This document shows positions 26,378 to 62,962 of a DNA stretch of 64,000 nucleotides, piece by piece. Below the pieces are notes generated by a model, which saw only the letters and a list, made by a program, of their open reading frames with translations, had not been told where the DNA came from and searched no databases. The translations under genes and the position numbers were made by a program. Positions within the stretch are counted from its first letter, which is position 1, and each line of letters opens with the position of its first letter. The DNA is from Podarcis erhardii (taxonomy: Eukaryota): NCBI GenBank assembly GCA_964252035.1, contig OZ176200.1. One strand, written 5' to 3'.

Positions 26378-27599
26378 TACAAACACAGGTGTGAAATTTG
26401 TTCCACAGTAGCTACTAGTTTGCTCCAAAGGAAAGCAGTAATATATGCTGCTTTATTTTTAAGGGTTGGTAAAAACTGGCGAGTTCTTGGCAGTCTTTTT
26501 ATTTTGTTCGTTTCACTTTGGACTTGTACAGTGACTGGCATTCCATAGAATGGGATTAACCGCACTGTACTAGACACAGTTGAATTCAAGGCTTGTATCA
26601 GAGGCAGATTTAGGGCAGGGAGAGTGGCTCCCTGCCCCCCGCCCCGGGCTCTGAACCGAGGCATGTGCTGCTGTGCATTGCAACTATGATGTAGTGCACG
26701 TGCAGAAAGGAAAGCACACTGAATTTTGGCCTCACACAAGGTGCTGCTGAAATTTGAAAGACCCAAGTCTGCCTGTGCTTTTATCCTAACACTATGGGGT
26801 TTGCTTGTTTGTTTGCTCTTGTACTGGGAGGTGTCAGGTTTGTTTCCAGTGAAACAGAATTGCTGTCAAGAGCAATTGTTGCTGCTAGTCTAAGCTTGAA
26901 AGCATAGCAGCGAACTCCTAGGGGCTGAGGTCCCTTTGTCCTCCTCCCTCATAAAATATTGGAGGCAGCTGCTCCCTCCCCCAAGTTGATGGGCATTGCC
27001 ATTCAAATGATGTGTGTGCTGCATCTTGTGATTGTGAAGAGCGGGGCTTACCTGAGCCCCCTCAATATTTATTCAATTTGGCACTCCTGCTGGAAAGCCA
27101 AGAAAAGTCCAGGAATCTAATCAGGAGTACAGCTGATGCTATAAGGAAGAGAGTGCCTGTGCAGAATGCAGTTCCATCTACTAGACTAGGGACACGATCA
27201 AGGTGAGCTCAGACCCTCCAAGTGTCCCTATTTTCCAGGGACAGTCCCGGATTTACAGAAGGTGTCCTGGTTTGATCCTGGAATGCCCTGCATTTCCTTA
27301 GGACGCCCCTATTTTCACCGGGGAAATGTTGGTGGGCATGTCTTAGCCTGATAACAGTCGCGCACCTTTCTTTTGAGAACCAGTGAGCCAGCCACCTATT
27401 TCCACTTAAGCAAAGTCACAGAGAAGAACCTAACAACCACCAAGCACTTCGTCCTTCGTAAGTCCTGCGTTTAAAGTGCACTTTCTGTCCTAACAAACAC
27501 ACGGGGAACGATTCGTTGCAGCAGCAGCAGCGGTGACCCCATTATCTTGATTTCCAGAACGGGACAGGCCAGGACTGGAAAAGCGGAAAAAGTCAGCAC

Positions 27600-28086
27600 C
27601 AAGCCCAGGTGAATGAATGGAGCCAGCAGCCGCGGCCCGCGCTTGCGAGCTTCCTTTGTGGCTCCCGCCCCTCGTTCCAAGCCGGAGAGAGGGCACGTAA
27701 CAATCCCAGATCCCAGTCTCTCCCTGCACGTCCGGCACTGCCCGGGAGCTTTTTCGTGCGCTGCGTTGGATCCCGCGTGTTCCCAGCGCGTGTCCTCGAG
27801 GGACGGCTGGATGAGGCGGCGGAGGCGGCGGCGAGAGAGAGAGAGGAAGCCAGGAGGGCGGGAAGGAGGGAGGCGCTGGGCGGGGGCGGAGGCGCCGCTC
27901 GCTCCCCGTGGTACGTGTGCACGCTCCCGAGCGGCATGTCCTCGCTTCTCGTATCCGGCGGCGTGTGGCGCGAGCATGGCATTTCCCGCGTGGAGCTCGG
28001 GCCCGGCCAGAAGCGGCATGCCGCCGCCGTGGTGAGGCGATGCCGCCCCGCCGGCCGGGAGCGGGACCTGGTCTTGCGCGCAAACC
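27600..28086 (+). promoter_or_regulatory. CpG-island promoter/5' UTR of exon 1a with GC boxes and HIF-core motifs
   Basis: Very high CpG density; GGGGCGG at about 27883-27889; CACGTA 27694-27699, CACGT 27727-27731, TACGTG-tg-CACGC 27912-27924. TSS position unknown. Confidence 0.65.
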
Positions 28087-28695
28087 ATGGCCTCCTCCGG
28101 CGGGGAAGCGGCCCAGCAGCAGCCCCCGGCGGCCGCCCAGCTCCGCGGAGACTCAGTAGAAAGCATGAGGAGAATTTTCATCCGCCACCCGCCCGGGAGC
28201 CGCCCGGAGGGGGGCGGAGAGGGGCAGCCTGCCGGGCCGGCCCCAGGCCCCCTCGGAGGCCTCCTGGGCCCCGCTGCGAGCCCGGCGGAGGCCCCGGGCG
28301 TCGAGGGCGCTTCGCCCTCCGCCGGCTCTCCGCCTGGCAGCAAAGCTCCTCTCCGGGAGCCCCGCAGAGATGCGCAGAGGCTAGTCTTGCGCTACGTGGT
28401 GCCCTGCATGAACGCCTATGGCTTGTGCATAGTCGACCACTTCCTGGGGCACAGGATGGCCGAGAAAATCTTCCAAGAGGTCCTGGCTTTGCACCTGAGT
28501 GACAAATTCCAGGACGGCGCCCTGGCGAGCCAGAAGGCGGGCGGCGGCCGAGCCATTCGCGGGGACAAGATTTTGTGGGTTGAGGGCAGTGAGCCGGGCT
28601 GTGAAAATATAGGCTACCTCCTGAAAAGAATGGATAAGCTCATCATGTACGCAGATGGCAAGCTGGGGCGCTACAAAATTAGAGGAAGACACAAG
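28087..28695 (+). CDS. EGLN3: Putative alternative first coding exon (exon 1a) of EGLN3: about 95-aa Pro/Gly/Ala-rich N-terminus plus an EGLN1/EGLN2-like N-terminal half of the HIF prolyl hydroxylase domain
   Basis: ATG in strong Kozak context (aaccATGG) with an in-frame stop upstream (28033-28035). 203 open codons including YVVPCMNAYGLCIVDHFLG...IRGDKILWVEGSEPGCENIG...GKLGRYKIRGRHK, ending in AAG|GTTAGT, phase 0. This is the same junction as exon 1b and is frame-compatible with exon 2. Splicing to exon 2 is inferred, not observed. Confidence 0.8.
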
Positions 28696-29589
28696 GTTAG
28701 TAGTTTGCAAGCCCCGACCGAAGTTCACTCCGGGCTCCTCCGGAGTTTCTGATCTCCCTCTCTGCCATTTCATGTACTCTTCCGAGTCTTAACCACGCAA
28801 TTCCTGGCCGCTCTGCTACCAGCTGCAAACTCGGGCTTGGCATTTGGTCCATCCGCTCAGATCCTAACCCTAGTTCGATCGCTTTGTGAAACAACTTTAA
28901 ACCGTGTAGCGTTCACAGTCTGGCAGCCCACGTGGGATTTCCTATATCCACGAACTGGAGAGGTAGTAGCGGGTGATTGTGTATGGCGGGGGGTAACCTC
29001 ACTACGCTTAAAGACACAGTTTCCTTTTTTTTTTTTTTGCTTTTCCCGCCTTCATCAAAAGTTCCCTAGAGTTATTAACCAGGATTTGTGAGCTAGAGTT
29101 TCAAGGAGAACAAATTTTCTGAAACACTCGTGCGTGTATATACATATATATATAACCCCGAACATCTTACTTTAACGGCTTTCTCTAACGTTTATACAGT
29201 ACTGGTAATTTCTGAAACGATAGTTATCTTGGCAGGTTAGGAGAGTGGCATATTTTCCTAGCTTTTAGGAGAAGAGGAATGAATTTAGAATCCAGGTGGT
29301 GACAAGTCAGTGAGTGCTTTTTAAACACATCATCTGTAACGAGAGGCTTTTGAAAGCCGGGAACTGGTATTCCGCACGCATGATCTTGTTTTCAAAGCGA
29401 ATTCCAGCTCTGCAATATGTTTTGTCAGCAGATGATCAGGTGTGAAAAGGGTGGAGGATGTCTTGTAGTGGGAGAGGGAGAGAAAGAAAAGAGGGAGATA
29501 AGCACTTGTAACCTCGCTCCCCATCCCTATAGCATTAAGTTGCCAAGAGAAACTCAACTGGCACTTAACGCCCTTATCCCCCCCCCCCC

Positions 29590-30529
29590 GTTTGTTTACA
29601 TTGGCTTGTAGTATGTGACCGTAGTAGAAGCGTACATGCTGGGGGAGAATTCCTCAATGGCGGAGACCACACCCACTCCGAGTTGTAGGCGGCGCATGAC
29701 GAACCATAAGCCGCGCCTCCTCCGGACACGCGGCTTTTCCTCTCCGCCCTCTCCCCCACGCCTTGATTCCAGCCGTGAACCCTACGCGGGTTGGACGCTT
29801 CCGGCGAAGCCCCGCCCCGCCTCCCTCTTGATTGGCTGCCCTCACGTTCCACAGGGCTGCGGGTAGGCGCGGGGAGAGATTGTCCCCGGGACGGGGCTCC
29901 ACCCACGTGGCGCTCGCCGCAGAAGTAGGAACACATTCTGCACGTAGCAGACGTATTAATCAGAGAGGGGCCATCTGCTGCCTCGGTGAAATAAATTGAA
30001 AGGAGTTTGCAGGACTCGGCACCAAAAAAAAAAAAAATTAGGGGGAGTGATCACATCAGCAATTGCGGGGTGTTCACACACTGGTCACCCGGCCTTAAAA
30101 CTGGTAGAAAAGAGCTGCTTCAGCTTCCTTTTCCAGAAACTGCCTCTCTGCCAAGGCGCTGATCCCCCCCCCCCCCCGGTATTGGGTGGAGGTCAGTCCG
30201 CGGAAGGCGTGCAGCCACCGTTCACTTCATTAGCCAGCCTTGTGTCGCCCAGGGGCTGGGAGAACCCGAGAAGGTGGCTGCTGACTGCGCTGAAGACAAA
30301 AGTACGAGTTTAGCCAAACTTTTGGGCACGCCGGTTTCTCTGACTAGCCGGACACTGATTTGCTCTGCTCGCTTCTCCCAAGAGTTAGGCATCGCTGCTG
30401 GCGCGTGTGGCGGATTCAGTGTGTTTAGAATCGCTGATAGAAACCAGGTCTCCTGGCGCGCGCTCCGCCGCTTGGCTTGCGGCTCTTGACTTTCTGCTAC
30501 AAGGGGCGAAATCAGTCGGGTTCATTAAA
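29590..30529 (+). promoter_or_regulatory. CpG-rich promoter/5' UTR of canonical EGLN3 exon 1b
   Basis: TGTTTAC 29593-29599, ATTGG 29600-29604 and 29831-29835, GC box CCCCGCCCC 29810-29818, CACGTG 29904-29909, CACGTA 29941-29946; no ATG from 29699 to 30529. Confidence 0.7.
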
Positions 30530-30886
30530 ATGCCACTGGGACATATCATGAGATTAGACCTAGAGAGAATTGCCTTGGACTACATAGTGCCTTGTTTGCA
30601 TGACATTGGTTTTTGCTACCTGGACAATTTTTTGGGCGACTTGGTAGGAGACTGTGTCCTGGAACGTGTGAAGCAGATGCATTATAACGGGGAGCTGCAG
30701 GATGGCCAGCTAGCCGGCAAGCGCAAAGGCATCTCCAAAAGACACTTGAGGGGCGACCAGATAAAGTGGATCGCAGGCACTGAAGAGGGATGCGAGGCCA
30801 TCAACTTTCTCTTGTCACTGATAGACAGACTGGTTATGTACTGTGGAAGTAGACTTGGCAAATACTATGTGAAAGAGAGGTCCAAG
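30530..30886 (+). CDS. EGLN3: EGLN3/PHD3 canonical coding exon 1 (exon 1b), 119 codons
   Basis: Translates MPLGHIMRLDLERIALDYIVPCLHDIGFCYLDNFLG...RHLRGDQIKWI...GKYYVKERSK, the recognisable EGLN3 N-terminus; donor AAG|GTAAGA, phase 0. Confidence 0.97.
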
Positions 30887-33289
30887 GTAAGAAATTAAAA
30901 TGGGGGGAAATAGCTACTAACACTTCTGATGTAATGGGGACTTTTAATTTAGGAGCCATTCTTGAATGTTTGGATTGTAAGGGGGGTTAATATCCTTATT
31001 TGCTTTCATACTGATGCTGGGCTTAATCTTTCCACCATAAACTGCAAAACACAGGTAAGCAATACCAGGGATAAGTTTTTATGATCCTCCACCCCAAGTT
31101 AAAATCCTAAAAAAGTTTATTGTGAATATGCTCCTTTGGAATCAACTGGATTTACTTACTGGTTTAAGAATTTTTCACTTTTTCAGTGCAGCATGTAAAT
31201 GGCTATAATTCACACTGGGGGAGCTGATTTGGTTTAAGTGAGATTATAACAGTGTAACTGGCCATCTTGTCTCCTCCTAGAAGTGGAAATGCAGGGTGTT
31301 GCATTTGTGAGGAATTTGTTTTTTAAAAAATATTACTAATAAGAATTGCACTATAGCATTGATTATACACCTTTAGAAGTTTCCTAGAACTACATTGGCA
31401 ATTCAAAATGATTTTGAATGGTGCCAAAAGTTTGTATAAGTCCATTGCCTAATTAGATTATCCTTGCTTTCCTGTCACTTTCCACTAAGCTCCAGGTTGG
31501 GTTCTTGTGGTGGTCATATGCTGAGTGCTTGTCAGGCTCCTGAGCAGCTTAGCTTGTCTTTAGAAAGGTAATAAAGTTAATCCCTAATTTATGCACATAT
31601 GTACCAGCAGAGGACACTGCACAGCTGAGTAAATAAACAAAATCCACAGCAATTAATAAATTAATTTATGCTGAAAAGTGACCGAAGTGTGGGCCCATGC
31701 ATAAACTCATTTTGGTTTGCATTGATCAAACTGATTGCACAGCTTCAACCTTCTGTTAGCAATCAGTTTCATACAATTTAAGCCTTTGCATGTCAGAAGT
31801 AAATCCTATTGAGCTCAGTGGAATTTCAACTTACTCCCTGGTTAGTGGAGTTAGGATTGCAGCTGTGGAATGCGAAACATATCTGGAAGTGACAACAAAA
31901 ATCCTGATTAATGGCCATGAGAGGACGTTCTGTAACAGTAGTTAGATTGGTTTCCTTCTTCCTTAGTTTCAGACTTCATTGAAATCACCAGATAAATTAT
32001 TTCATTGCTTTTCCTTCCTTCCCTACCACTCAAGAGGTAAAGAAGTAAAATAATGTCATGCATATGTTCAGTTGAACAAAAGCAGTTTTGACAAAAGCCA
32101 GCACATTAGCTAGTTTTTGAAAAGTTGTTCGGGACTTTCTTCCTCACTTCTGTGTTGCTTATTATTCCAGCATCCTTCATGCTAATGAATGAATAGTTTT
32201 ACTAGAACTCAACTTTAGGTAGTGACTAAGCCTACAGAAGTATATCTGTAACTCTGCTATAGGCTTAATTATTTACGGTGCAATCCTATGCCTGTCAGAA
32301 GTAAGTCTCATTGATTCAAATGAGGCGTACTTCCAGGTAAGTGGGTATGGGATTAAAGTCTTTGGATTGTGTGCAACTAACTTTGAATTAGAGTAGACCC
32401 AGTGATCCATTGCTTTTAACATCAATGGGTCTACTCTGAGTCAAAGTTGACTACAACCCCATGAATCACAAATAGGACTTGCAACAAAATATTGCAGTGT
32501 GGACTGGGTGTATTCAGAGTTCCAGACAACAATGGCCTTTTGCAAGACACTTCATTTGCCCTGGTTTTGTCTTCCCAGTCAGCCAGTGTACTATGGCTAC
32601 CAAGCATGCTCAGTGAGCTAGTTGGTGGCTTCCCCTCCTCTTACTTTTTTGGGGTGATATTTTACATTTTTGTGTTTCAGCAAACCTTGGGACTCTTCTG
32701 AACCTCTTATGTATTGATGCATTTTGGGTACAGTCTAATGAGTTTGCTGTTAGCATATAGAATTCTTAGATTTGCTTATGTTTATCACAGAAGTAGAAGT
32801 TAAACTGAGTTAAAAGTGATCAACCATCACTCTGACTGCTAGTAAGCATAGCCACAATCTGTGTACAGTTTTAGCTATCTACGTAAAGCTGTCTTAAGGT
32901 GGTGATTGTAAGCATGCTTACTAGGGAATAAATCCCGGCTGAATTAAATAGGACTTGTAAGCAAAGATGCTTAGAACCGTGGAGCACAGGAGATGGAACA
33001 TCATGGGGGAATGAATATGGAAGAGAAATCATAACACACATTGCACACATTGGGAAGTTACAGACTATATTCATGTTAGAAGCTGATTTAAGCCCCAGTC
33101 TTGAAAATAATCTATGGCCACAATGATTCACACACTTACCTGGAGCCAAGTCCCATTGAACTCAGTTGGACCACTTCTGAGAAGATGTGCATAGGATGTC
33201 ACTGTAAGTTTATTTACTTAATTACTTCTCCAAGGAGCTCATGTTGACACACATGGTCCAAACTCTCCTCGTCTAATCCTTGCCAGATC

Positions 33290-57418: not shown

Positions 57419-57550
<132 letters not shown>

Positions 57551-60307: not shown

Positions 60308-60472
<165 letters not shown>

Positions 60473-62767: not shown

Positions 62768-62810
<43 letters not shown>

Positions 62811-62811
62811 T
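62768..62811. repeat. (TAT)n microsatellite upstream of the exon 4 acceptor
   Basis: Direct inspection. Confidence 0.95.
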
Positions 62812-62888
62812 ATATGAGAGAAAAGTGCAGTTTTCTCTTCTCTCAGGGTAGCATTTAGAGACTTACATCGATTTCCTCTCCTTTACAG

Positions 62889-62962
62889 GTATGCCATGAC
62901 TGTGTGGTATTTTGATGCTGAAGAAAGAGCAGAAGCCAAAAAGAAATTCAGGAATTTAGTTG
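62889..62962 (+). CDS. EGLN3: EGLN3 exon 4; the final coding exon is not seen in the window
   Basis: ctttacag|G TAT GCC...GTT G|gtatgt; 74 bp, (R)YAMTVWYFDAEERAEAKKKFRNLV. Confidence 0.96.

What the first reader, a model, noticed from the sequence alone, without database searches (positions are those of the whole stretch)
28087..30886. Two alternative first exons, each encoding half of the PHD catalytic domain: one locus, two oxygen-sensor enzymes
Seen in sequence: 1.8 kb upstream of canonical EGLN3 exon 1 is a second, intact CpG-island exon (28087-28695, 203 codons). Its last 108 aa are a PHD N-terminal half-domain, and it ends RGRHK|GTTAGT at the same phase-0 position as exon 1b (KERSK|GTAAGA). 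I found only one exon 2 (AMVACYPG, 57419), and none between 1a and 1b. Established: the Fe triad (HxD...H) and the 2OG-binding Arg lie in exons 2-4, and mammalian EGLN3 is normally described with a single coding first exon. Inference: promoter choice splices either half-domain onto the shared core. That gives the ordinary PHD3 (229 codons within the window) or a longer chimeric PHD2/1-like-N plus PHD3-C enzyme (313 codons within the window), effectively a fourth HIF prolyl hydroxylase hidden inside EGLN3. I cannot tell whether automated annotation already lists it.
Basis: partly seen in the sequence, partly recalled or inferred. Interest (0 to 1): 0.93.

Follow-up and report, generated by a model that had tools for sequence, protein, structure and literature searches.

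The report
Ancient alternative first exon of EGLN3
This lizard's oxygen-sensor gene EGLN3 (PHD3) has two promoters and two first coding exons, each supplying a different front half of the catalytic domain to the same back half; the arrangement is older than the shark–bony vertebrate split, is transcribed, already sits in automatic annotation as "isoform X1", but seems never to have been studied.

Summary
Exon 1a (28087-28695, 203 codons) and exon 1b (30530-30886, 119 codons) each end in phase 0 at the same position of the PHD domain. The window holds only one exon 2 (57419).

RNA contigs from four runs of two closely related organisms end at the 1a donor and continue with the first 30 bases of exon 2. 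One run shows the same for 1b. NCBI already annotates the 1a product as "EGLN3 isoform X1" in squamates, turtles, caecilians, lungfish, ray-finned fishes, sharks and rays.

The 1a half-domain is under purifying selection (dN/dS 0.07-0.29). The 1a-1b spacing of 1.6-1.8 kb is kept in five reptiles. I found no 1a within 7-10 kb upstream of 1b in a swallow, an alligator, a frog or a bat.

The tree favours 1a and 1b as sister exons of the EGLN3 lineage, with 1b the fast-evolving copy, so "chimeric" describes resemblance, not origin. An AU test cannot exclude the alternatives.

1a carries PHD2-type residues at 6 of the 8 published NODD/CODD selectivity positions; 1b is PHD3-type. A change in substrate selectivity is therefore a concrete but untested prediction. 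I found no paper describing this isoform.

The parts
27686..28086 (+). Upstream promoter and 5' UTR of the exon 1a transcript, inside a CpG island
   Evidence: RNA contigs reach back to 27968 and 28032. The block 27686-28706 is about 75% conserved with snake and gecko. CpG observed/expected is about 0.8. The transcription start is inferred from contig ends only.
28087..28371 (+). Exon 1a, first 95 codons: a Pro/Gly/Ala-rich N-terminal extension predicted to be disordered, with a short conserved helix motif (SVESMRRIF)
   Evidence: pLDDT is about 40 for residues 1-90, with a helix at 22-28. dN/dS is 0.58 against Podarcis. No MYND or other Pfam domain is present.
28372..28695 (+). Exon 1a, last 108 codons: the N-terminal half of the PHD catalytic domain (equivalent to PHD2 residues ~190-297), including the family-invariant RGD and Trp
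   Evidence: Gapless match to human PHD2, E 5e-37. dN/dS is 0.07-0.29 among six reptiles. Invariant residues R158, G159, D160, W164, D183 and R201 are kept. pLDDT is above 90.
28519..28557 (+). Coding sequence of the beta2-beta3 loop of the 1a form (ALASQKAGGGRAI, 11 residues between L240 and R252 as in PHD1/2)
   Evidence: Loop length and residues were compared across 89 1a, 16 1b, 12 EGLN1 and 11 EGLN2 sequences. Selectivity positions are from PMC5007464.
28696..28703 (+). Splice donor of exon 1a (gttagtag), conserved in six reptiles
   Evidence: RNA contigs leave the genome exactly here and continue with exon 2.
29534..30529 (+). Internal promoter and 5' UTR of the exon 1b transcript, lying in the intron of the 1a transcript
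   Evidence: RNA contigs of the 1b transcript start between 29850 and 30036. The block 29534-30116 is conserved in snake, gecko and turtle, and sub-blocks are conserved in swallow and frog.
30530..30886 (+). Exon 1b coding part, 119 codons: the canonical PHD3 N-terminal half-domain
   Evidence: 84-98% identical to the first exon of EGLN3 in bird, bat, alligator, turtle and other squamates, and 65% to that of the frog Spea. dN/dS is 0.04-0.13. An RNA contig continues into exon 2 from 30887.
57419..57538 (+). Shared exon 2 ([10 protein letters not shown]...; holds the HxD of the iron triad)
   Evidence: Its first 30 bases are the loose end of the 1a and 1b contigs.
60335..60471 (+). Shared exon 3 (holds the distal His, ...RRNPHEV...)
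62889..62962 (+). Shared exon 4 (its first base completes the Arg codon split between exons 3 and 4, the 2OG-binding Arg in ...YATRYA...); the last coding exon lies beyond the window
   Evidence: P0001 continues for 12 more residues.

Best explanation
The window holds the 5' two-thirds of a lacertid EGLN3 (PHD3) gene with two alternative promoters and two mutually exclusive coding first exons.

Transcripts that start in the upstream CpG island carry exon 1a: a 95-residue disordered extension followed by a 108-residue N-terminal half of the PHD domain. Transcripts that start about 1.2-1.4 kb downstream of the 1a donor, inside the 1a intron, carry exon 1b, the canonical PHD3 half-domain. Both exons end in phase 0 at the same domain position and splice to the same exon 2. 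Exons 2-4 (and the last exon, outside the window) carry the HxD...H iron triad and the 2OG-binding Arg. The locus therefore encodes the ordinary ~240-residue PHD3 and a ~325-residue long form with a complete catalytic domain.

Shown here: the exon structure, both splice junctions in RNA, purifying selection, conserved synteny, and the presence of both forms from cartilaginous fishes to squamates.

Inferred:
- 1a and 1b arose by tandem duplication of the first exon in the EGLN3 lineage before the gnathostome radiation.
- 1a stayed close to the ancestral PHD2-like sequence, while 1b diverged fast.
- 1a was lost independently in mammals, archosaurs and frogs.
- All eight published NODD/CODD selectivity residues lie in the swapped half, and 1a has the PHD2 state at six of them. 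The long form is therefore predicted to be less CODD-restricted than canonical PHD3, so promoter choice would switch substrate selectivity as well as regulation.
For: Structure and frames:
- Exon boundaries, phases and open frames.

RNA:
- In Logan contigs of four RNA runs (organisms A and C, 95-99% identical to the window), coverage stops at 28696 and the loose end reads CAATGGTAGCCTGCTACCCTGGAAATGGAA. This is exon 2 from 57420.
- The same loose end follows 30887 in run X1.
- No contig from any of the four runs covers 28774-28907 or the bases beyond 30918, and no 1a-1b joint was seen.

Annotation:
- P0001 (Podarcis muralis EGLN3 isoform X1, 325 aa, 96% identical) and P0002 read RGRHK|[10 protein letters not shown].
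- The same architecture is annotated in snakes, geckos, turtles, caecilians, lungfish, bichir, paddlefish, many teleosts and rays. In gar, bowfin (Amia), a shark and the chimaera Callorhinchus only the 1a exon itself was found, in partial or read-through models.
- The 1b form is annotated in the same ray species.

Selection and synteny:
- dN/dS is 0.07-0.29 for the 1a half-domain.
- The donor is conserved and the spacing of 1623-1834 bases is kept in six reptiles.

Fold:
- The AlphaFold model has pLDDT above 90 over 93-314, with TM 0.89-0.93 and 70% identity to human PHD2 structures.
- PF13640 is hit, and the family-invariant N-half residues are kept.

Origin:
- In the tree, the 1a clade scores 98/92, the 1b clade 100/99 and 1a+1b 98/85. 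The stem lengths are 0.17 for 1a and 0.57 for 1b.
- Both exons share Ala at PHD2 position 241, where EGLN1, EGLN2, lamprey and most invertebrate sequences have Val.

Selectivity residues:
- PHD2 has V S K I I R I G and PHD3 has A G R L V L V E (PMC5007464).
- The window's 1a has A S K I I M I G and its 1b has A G R L V M V E.
- That paper also reports that R65K and L73I raise NODD activity of PHD3; these are the states 1a has.

Loss:
- No protein or nucleotide match to 1a lies upstream of 1b in swallow, alligator or Spea (10 kb, no gaps) or in a bat (7.4 kb).
Against: - No protein-level or enzymatic evidence exists for the long form.
- The RNA comes from close relatives, not demonstrably from the window's own species. 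The runs were chosen because they hold 1a words, so the relative depths (1a equal to or above 1b) cannot be read as expression levels.
- Transcription starts are inferred from contig ends, not from CAGE or 5'RACE.
- The 1a+1b sister grouping rests on 108 columns. AU tests do not reject 1a with EGLN1 (p 0.165) or 1b outside all paralogues (p 0.253).
- The loss claims rest on one species per group and a 7-10 kb search span.
- In many teleost 1a sequences position 244 is Thr and position 242 is Cys, so the PHD2-like pattern is not uniform.
- Position 241 in 1a is the PHD3 state.
Confidence: 0.88

Rival explanations
1. Exon 1a was captured from, or is the last remnant of, a neighbouring EGLN1/EGLN2-like paralogue. 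It would not be a duplicate of EGLN3's own first exon, and the long form would be a true evolutionary chimera.
For: 1a is 55-57% identical to EGLN1 and 50-51% to EGLN2, but only 40% to 1b. Its beta2-beta3 loop has the EGLN1/2 length. AU tests do not reject 1a+EGLN1+lamprey as one clade (p 0.165).
Against: The ML tree groups 1a with 1b (98/85), even though 1b's long branch would be expected to pull it towards the outgroups rather than to 1a. 1a and 1b share the derived Ala at position 241. No other EGLN-like exon lies in the window.
Confidence: 0.12
2. Exon 1a transcripts are made and spliced but are not translated into a working enzyme. The upstream promoter would serve regulation of the 1b promoter by transcriptional interference, or produce a non-catalytic protein.
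For: There are no protein data. The first 95 codons evolve almost neutrally (dN/dS 0.58). The 1b promoter lies inside the 1a transcription unit.
Against: The half-domain is under purifying selection (dN/dS 0.07-0.29). The frame, phase and donor have been kept since before the shark-bony vertebrate split. All family-invariant N-half residues are kept. The model packs the 1a half against the shared half with pLDDT above 90.
Confidence: 0.05
3. Exon 1a belongs to a separate upstream gene or is an assembly or annotation artefact.
For: Some database entries end after 1a by reading into the intron (P0003, P0008, P0012), and others fuse 1a and 1b in one model (P0064, P0065, P0066).
Against: Spliced RNA joins 1a to exon 2. 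The same layout is found in six independent reptile assemblies. There is no second exon 2.
Confidence: 0.01

Closest known systems
Canonical PHD3 / EGLN3 (human, mouse; ~239 aa)
   Same: It is the same gene, with exons 2-5 shared to the residue and the same catalytic triad. Exon 1b of the window is the orthologue of the mammalian first exon (85% identical to the bat's).
   Different: The long form replaces the whole exon-1-encoded half of the domain with a 40%-identical paralogous half and adds a 95-residue disordered N-terminus. No upstream 1a exon was found in the mammal, bird, alligator and frog examined. The PHD3 review PMC3963164 lists only the delta-1 and delta-4 splice forms.
PHD2 / EGLN1 catalytic domain (PDB 5L9B, 2G19 and others)
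   Same: The long isoform's domain is 70% identical to human PHD2 over 214 residues, with TM 0.89-0.93. The beta2-beta3 loop has the same length, and the residue is the same at 6 of 8 ODD-selectivity positions.
   Different: There is no MYND zinc finger. The C-terminal half is EGLN3's. Position 241 is Ala and position 281 is Met. The tree places 1a with 1b, not with EGLN1.
Human PHD3 splice variants PHD3-delta-1 and PHD3-delta-4 (Cervera et al. 2006, as cited in PMC3963164)
   Same: They are alternative mRNAs of EGLN3 that change the protein.
   Different: Those delete part of exon 1 or all of exon 4. According to the review, delta-1 lacks hydroxylase activity. The 1a form substitutes a complete homologous half-domain from its own promoter.
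Genes with duplicated, mutually exclusive coding first exons driven by separate promoters (general mechanism; my own knowledge, not tested here)
   Same: There are two promoters, each with a homologous first coding exon, joined to common downstream exons.
   Different: Here the swapped exon encodes half of a single catalytic fold, including its substrate-selectivity elements, rather than a signal peptide or a separate domain.

Membership tests
HIF prolyl 4-hydroxylase (EGLN/PHD) family of 2OG/Fe(II) oxygenases | HxD...H iron-binding triad and 2OG-binding Arg in the double-stranded beta-helix core | tested here: met
   RHVDNP, NPHEV and YATRYA lie in shared exons 2-4. PF13640 scores 79 bits on P0001.
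HIF prolyl 4-hydroxylase (EGLN/PHD) family of 2OG/Fe(II) oxygenases | Complete PHD fold, with the N-terminal helices, the beta2-beta3 finger and the RGD...W motif packed on the core | tested here: met
   The AlphaFold model has pLDDT above 90 over 93-314 and TM 0.89-0.93 to PHD2 structures. Invariant R158, G159, D160 and W164 are kept.
HIF prolyl 4-hydroxylase (EGLN/PHD) family of 2OG/Fe(II) oxygenases | Oxygen-dependent hydroxylation of HIF-alpha LXXLAP prolines | not testable with these tools
   This needs a recombinant enzyme assay.
EGLN3 orthologue | Exons 2-5 and first exon 1b orthologous to vertebrate EGLN3 | tested here: met
   1b falls in the EGLN3 clade with bird and mammal sequences (100/99). 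Exons 2-4 are 97-100% identical to Podarcis EGLN3.
Alternative-promoter, mutually exclusive first exons | Each first exon is spliced to the same downstream acceptor, and the two never occur together in one mRNA | tested here: met
   The loose ends at 28696 (four runs) and 30887 (one run) are the same exon 2 sequence. No joints were found within 27300-31300.
Alternative-promoter, mutually exclusive first exons | Two separate transcription start regions | tested here: inconclusive
   Contig 5' ends lie at 27968/28032 for 1a and 29850-30036 for 1b. Contig ends are not mapped start sites, and there are no CAGE data.
Tandem exon duplication within EGLN3 | The two exons are each other's closest relatives, with the same phase and boundary | tested here: inconclusive
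   The phase and boundary are the same. The ML tree gives 98/85 for 1a+1b and both share Ala241. AU tests do not reject the alternatives (p 0.165 and 0.253).

The most novel reading that the evidence does not exclude
Most jawed vertebrates other than mammals, archosaurs and frogs would have a functionally distinct fourth HIF prolyl hydroxylase activity, a long EGLN3 form made from its own CpG-island promoter. Its swapped half-domain would give it PHD2-like (NODD-competent) substrate selectivity, while its C-terminal half is PHD3's. Oxygen sensing in fishes and non-avian reptiles would then be wired differently from the three-enzyme mammalian model. Exon-1-targeted phd3 mutants in fish would not be nulls.
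Probability: 0.4. Interest if true: 0.8.

Novelty: new variant of a known kind. Interest (0 to 1): 0.62.

Why it matters
The HIF hydroxylase system is described everywhere as three enzymes, with PHD3 as the short, CODD-selective, hypoxia-induced one. This locus shows that in a large part of the vertebrate tree EGLN3 also makes a second enzyme. Its substrate-facing half is a different, slowly evolving, PHD2-like paralogue more than 450 million years old.

Three consequences follow.

- It provides a natural domain-swap experiment for the residues that set NODD/CODD selectivity.
- It raises the question of why mammals, archosaurs and frogs each appear to have lost 1a.
- It has a practical side. 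Comparative studies that take "the longest isoform" of EGLN3 may mix non-orthologous first exons. The published zebrafish phd3-null allele is an 8-bp deletion in exon 1 of the 243-aa form (PMC10724695). It would leave a long form intact if zebrafish has 1a, as carp and Danionella do. Zebrafish itself was not checked here.

The sequence itself is not new: RefSeq and UniProt already hold it as predicted isoform X1.

Tried and rejected
- **Second exon 2.** I looked for a second exon-2-like sequence or any other EGLN exon anywhere in the window and found none.
- **MYND finger.** I looked for a MYND finger or other domain in the 1a N-terminal extension, including the 335-residue extension of rays, and found none. 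1a is therefore not simply an EGLN1-type first exon.
- **Logan protein hits.** I hoped these (P0012, P0018 and others) were spliced transcripts. They are genomic read-throughs into the intron.
- **Phylogenetic alternatives.** AU tests of the two alternative placements of 1a and 1b were inconclusive.
- **Literature.** Nine full-text searches found no paper on this isoform. The terms covered EGLN3/PHD3 with alternative first exon, alternative promoter, exon 1a/1b, isoform X1, long isoform, fish isoforms and PHD evolution. The Megalobrama PHD3 splice paper (BBRC 2016) is known to me only through a citation, and I could not read it.
- **Genome look-ups.** Look-ups for Xenopus tropicalis and Latimeria returned no DNA.
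- **Promoter and HRE scans.** The bacterial-type promoter scan is irrelevant to this genome. A plain RCGTG count is too unspecific in a CpG island to assign hypoxia response to either promoter.
- **Unplaced 29-base end.** A 29-base loose end upstream of 27968 in one contig is not found in the window.
Full report
**What is in the sequence**

The + strand carries an ORF from ATG 28087. Its first 203 codons end at CACAAG|gttagtag at 28695/28696. A second ATG lies 1834 bases further on, at 30530. It opens 119 codons that end at TCCAAG|gtaagaaa at 30886. Both exons end after a complete codon and at the same alignment position, the Lys that corresponds to K297 of human PHD2.

The region 27001-30000 is a CpG island, with GC 0.57-0.63 and CpG observed/expected about 0.8. 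The rest of the window shows 0.1-0.4. There are no N runs.

A tblastn of a full-length relative against all 64 kb finds one exon 2 (57419-57538), one exon 3 (60335-60471) and one exon 4 (62889-62962), and no further EGLN-like piece. Joining either first exon to exons 2-4 gives an open frame of 313 or 229 codons within the window.

**Is the upstream exon used?**

Four RNA runs hold about half of the 31-mers of exon 1a. Their contigs were laid on 27300-31300.

- In all four runs (X1, X5, X9 of organism A; X14 of organism C; 95-99% identical to the window), a contig covers exon 1a and leaves the genome at 28696. It then continues with CAATGGTAGCCTGCTACCCTGGAAATGGAA, which is exon 2 from 57420.
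- In X9 the contig is 1776 bases long, with about 1 kb beyond the junction.
- In X1 the exon 1b contig ends at 30887 with the same continuation.
- No contig from any of the four runs covers 28774-28907 or the bases beyond 30918, and no joint links 1a to 1b.
- Contigs of the 1a transcript begin at 27968 and 28032. Those of the 1b transcript begin between 29850 and 30036.

Three caveats apply. The RNA is from close relatives, not demonstrably the same species. The runs were selected for holding 1a, so the depths (1a equal to or above 1b in all four) say nothing reliable about abundance. Contig ends are not mapped start sites.

**Is it already annotated?**

Yes. The best protein match is "prolyl hydroxylase EGLN3 isoform X1 [Podarcis muralis]" (P0001, 325 aa, 96% identical over exon 1a). 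It reads ...RGRHK|[10 protein letters not shown]....

Equivalent isoform X1 models exist for Zootoca, snakes, geckos, Anolis, turtles, caecilians, lungfish, bichir, paddlefish and many teleosts. For gar (Atractosteus), Amia, a shark (Mustelus) and the chimaera Callorhinchus only partial or read-through models holding exon 1a were found. The rays Hemitrygon, Hypanus and Mobula have a 570-aa form. The short 1b form is annotated in the same ray and shark species.

Several database entries mishandle the locus. Some read from 1a into the intron (P0003, P0008, P0012). Others fuse 1a and 1b in series (P0064, P0065, P0007, P0066).

Nine full-text literature searches found no paper on this isoform. A dedicated PHD3 review lists only the delta-1 and delta-4 splice forms and says no alternative transcripts were published from intron 1 (PMC3963164).

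**Constraint and synteny**

In Zootoca, Podarcis, Crotalus, Paroedura and the turtle Malaclemys the order is 1a, then 1623-1818 bases, then 1b, with the donor gttagt kept.

| Region | Pairwise dN/dS (Nei-Gojobori) |
|---|---|
| 108-codon half-domain of 1a | 0.07-0.29 |
| Exon 1b | 0.04-0.13 |
| Exons 2+3 | about 0.01 |
| First 95 codons of 1a (window vs Podarcis) | 0.58 |

The first 95 codons are much freer than the half-domain and are predicted to be disordered. The frame, phase and boundary of 1a are the same in cartilaginous fishes. The exon is therefore a coding exon maintained for more than the age of crown gnathostomes.

**Where it is missing**

No protein or nucleotide match to 1a is found upstream of exon 1b in these four species:

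- swallow: 10 kb upstream, no gaps;
- alligator: 10 kb upstream, no gaps;
- the frog Spea: 10 kb upstream, no gaps;
- a bat: 7.4 kb of ungapped sequence upstream.

In all four the 1b exon is found easily. In swallow and Spea, parts of the 1b promoter are found as well. None of the named proteins in the 92-member 1a clade is from a mammal, bird, crocodilian or frog.

This fits independent losses in mammals, archosaurs and frogs. It rests on one genome each and a limited span. Salamanders, coelacanth and cyclostomes were not resolved.

**Origin**

The 1a half-domain resembles EGLN1 most: 55-57% identical, E 5e-37 to human PHD2. It is 50-51% identical to EGLN2 and only 40% to its neighbour 1b. 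Exon 1b is 41-48% identical to all of these.

A maximum-likelihood tree of 79 half-domains (108 columns) nevertheless recovers these groups:

| Group | Support | Stem length |
|---|---|---|
| 1a | 98/92 | 0.17 |
| 1b | 100/99 | 0.57 |
| EGLN1 | 98/91 | |
| EGLN2 | 100/92 | |
| 1a + 1b | 98/85 | |

Both exons also have Ala at PHD2 position 241. EGLN1, EGLN2, the two lamprey sequences and most of the invertebrate sequences used as outgroup have Val there.

The favoured reading is a tandem duplication of the first exon within the EGLN3 lineage before the shark-bony vertebrate split. After it, 1b diverged quickly while 1a stayed near the ancestral state. AU tests do not reject 1a with EGLN1 (p 0.165) or 1b outside all vertebrate paralogues (p 0.253). 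This is the best-supported reading, not a proven one. "Chimeric" describes resemblance rather than history.

**What the swap changes**

The AlphaFold model of the long form (alignment A1) is confident over residues 93-314. It matches human PHD2 crystal structures with TM 0.89-0.93 and 70% identity. Residues 1-90 and the tip of the beta2-beta3 loop are of low confidence. The residues invariant across all aligned PHDs in the first-exon half (RGD, Trp, Asp183, Arg201 in P0001 numbering) are kept.

Chowdhury et al. 2016 (PMC5007464) identified eight residues that set NODD/CODD selectivity. All eight lie in the exon-1-encoded half.

| Sequence | 241 | 242 | 244 | 251 | 280 | 281 | 292 | 294 |
|---|---|---|---|---|---|---|---|---|
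| PHD2 | V | S | K | I | I | R | I | G |
| PHD3 | A | G | R | L | V | L | V | E |
| Window 1a | A | S | K | I | I | M | I | G |
| Window 1b | A | G | R | L | V | M | V | E |

Exon 1a has the PHD2 state at six positions, including K244 and I251. The paper reports that introducing these two states into PHD3 (R65K, L73I) raised NODD hydroxylation.

Across the 1a clade, I251 (87 of 89), I280 (83 of 92), I292 (91 of 92) and G294 (88 of 92) are nearly fixed, while positions 242 and 244 vary in teleosts. The 1a loop has the EGLN1/2 length (11 residues), and 1b has one residue more.

The prediction is that the long form is less CODD-restricted than PHD3. This follows from established structure-function work but is untested.

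**Verdict**

The finding is real and its mechanism is supported at the transcript and selection level. The object is already present in automatic annotation. What appears to be new is recognising it as an ancient, constrained swap of half a catalytic domain, with a specific biochemical prediction and a patchy pattern of loss.

The scan's two other notes on this window concern the loop swap and the claim that 1a is not a recent copy. They agree with what I found. The exception is the suggested "pre-duplication relic", which the tree does not favour.

Noticed in passing
Related protein P0003 (Podarcis muralis, 'EGLN3-like', 221 aa, on a 63.5-Mb contig different from the 137-Mb contig of P0001): This looks like a second, diverged copy of exon 1a (92% identical to the window's), annotated as its own gene and read through the donor into the intron. 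It may be a segmental duplicate on another chromosome or come from another assembly.
   Followed up: no
Proteins P0064, P0065, P0007, P0066 (Sphaerodactylus, Lerista, Phrynosoma, Cyprinus carpio): These database gene models place the 1a and 1b half-domains in series in one protein (two matched stretches each). The spliced RNA seen here argues against such a protein, so they are probably annotation errors.
   Followed up: partly
window 29624-29680 and 29931-29982: These short blocks just upstream of the 1b transcript start are conserved as far as swallow (both blocks) and frog (the first). Three ACGTG cores lie at 29843-29945, and the last (29941-29945) lies inside the second block. This could be the hypoxia-responsive promoter, but the motif is too common in CpG islands to say.
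   Followed up: partly
Proteins P0084, P0094, P0082 (rays, shark, chimaera): Cartilaginous-fish 1a exons carry a very long N-terminal extension: about 335 residues in the rays and the shark, about 140 in the chimaera model. They also carry an insertion of 8-11 residues in the beta2-beta3 loop. No Pfam domain is found in the two extensions scanned (ray P0084 and shark P0094).
   Followed up: partly
window 30164-30179: A poly-C tract in the 1b 5' UTR differs in length from the relatives' RNA contigs (7 bases left out) and breaks one contig alignment at 30171.
   Followed up: no
window 27968 (run X9 contig): The 1a contig of run X9 has 29 further bases at its 5' end that match nothing in the window, even with up to 3 mismatches. 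They may be an upstream non-coding exon outside the window, divergent sequence or an assembly chimera.
   Followed up: partly
window 62770-62812: An (ATT)n microsatellite lies in the intron just upstream of exon 4.
   Followed up: no
Literature: PMC10724695: The published zebrafish phd3-null allele is an 8-bp deletion in exon 1 of the 243-aa (1b-type) form. If zebrafish has exon 1a, as carp and Danionella do, that allele would not touch the long isoform. Whether zebrafish has 1a was not checked here.
   Followed up: no
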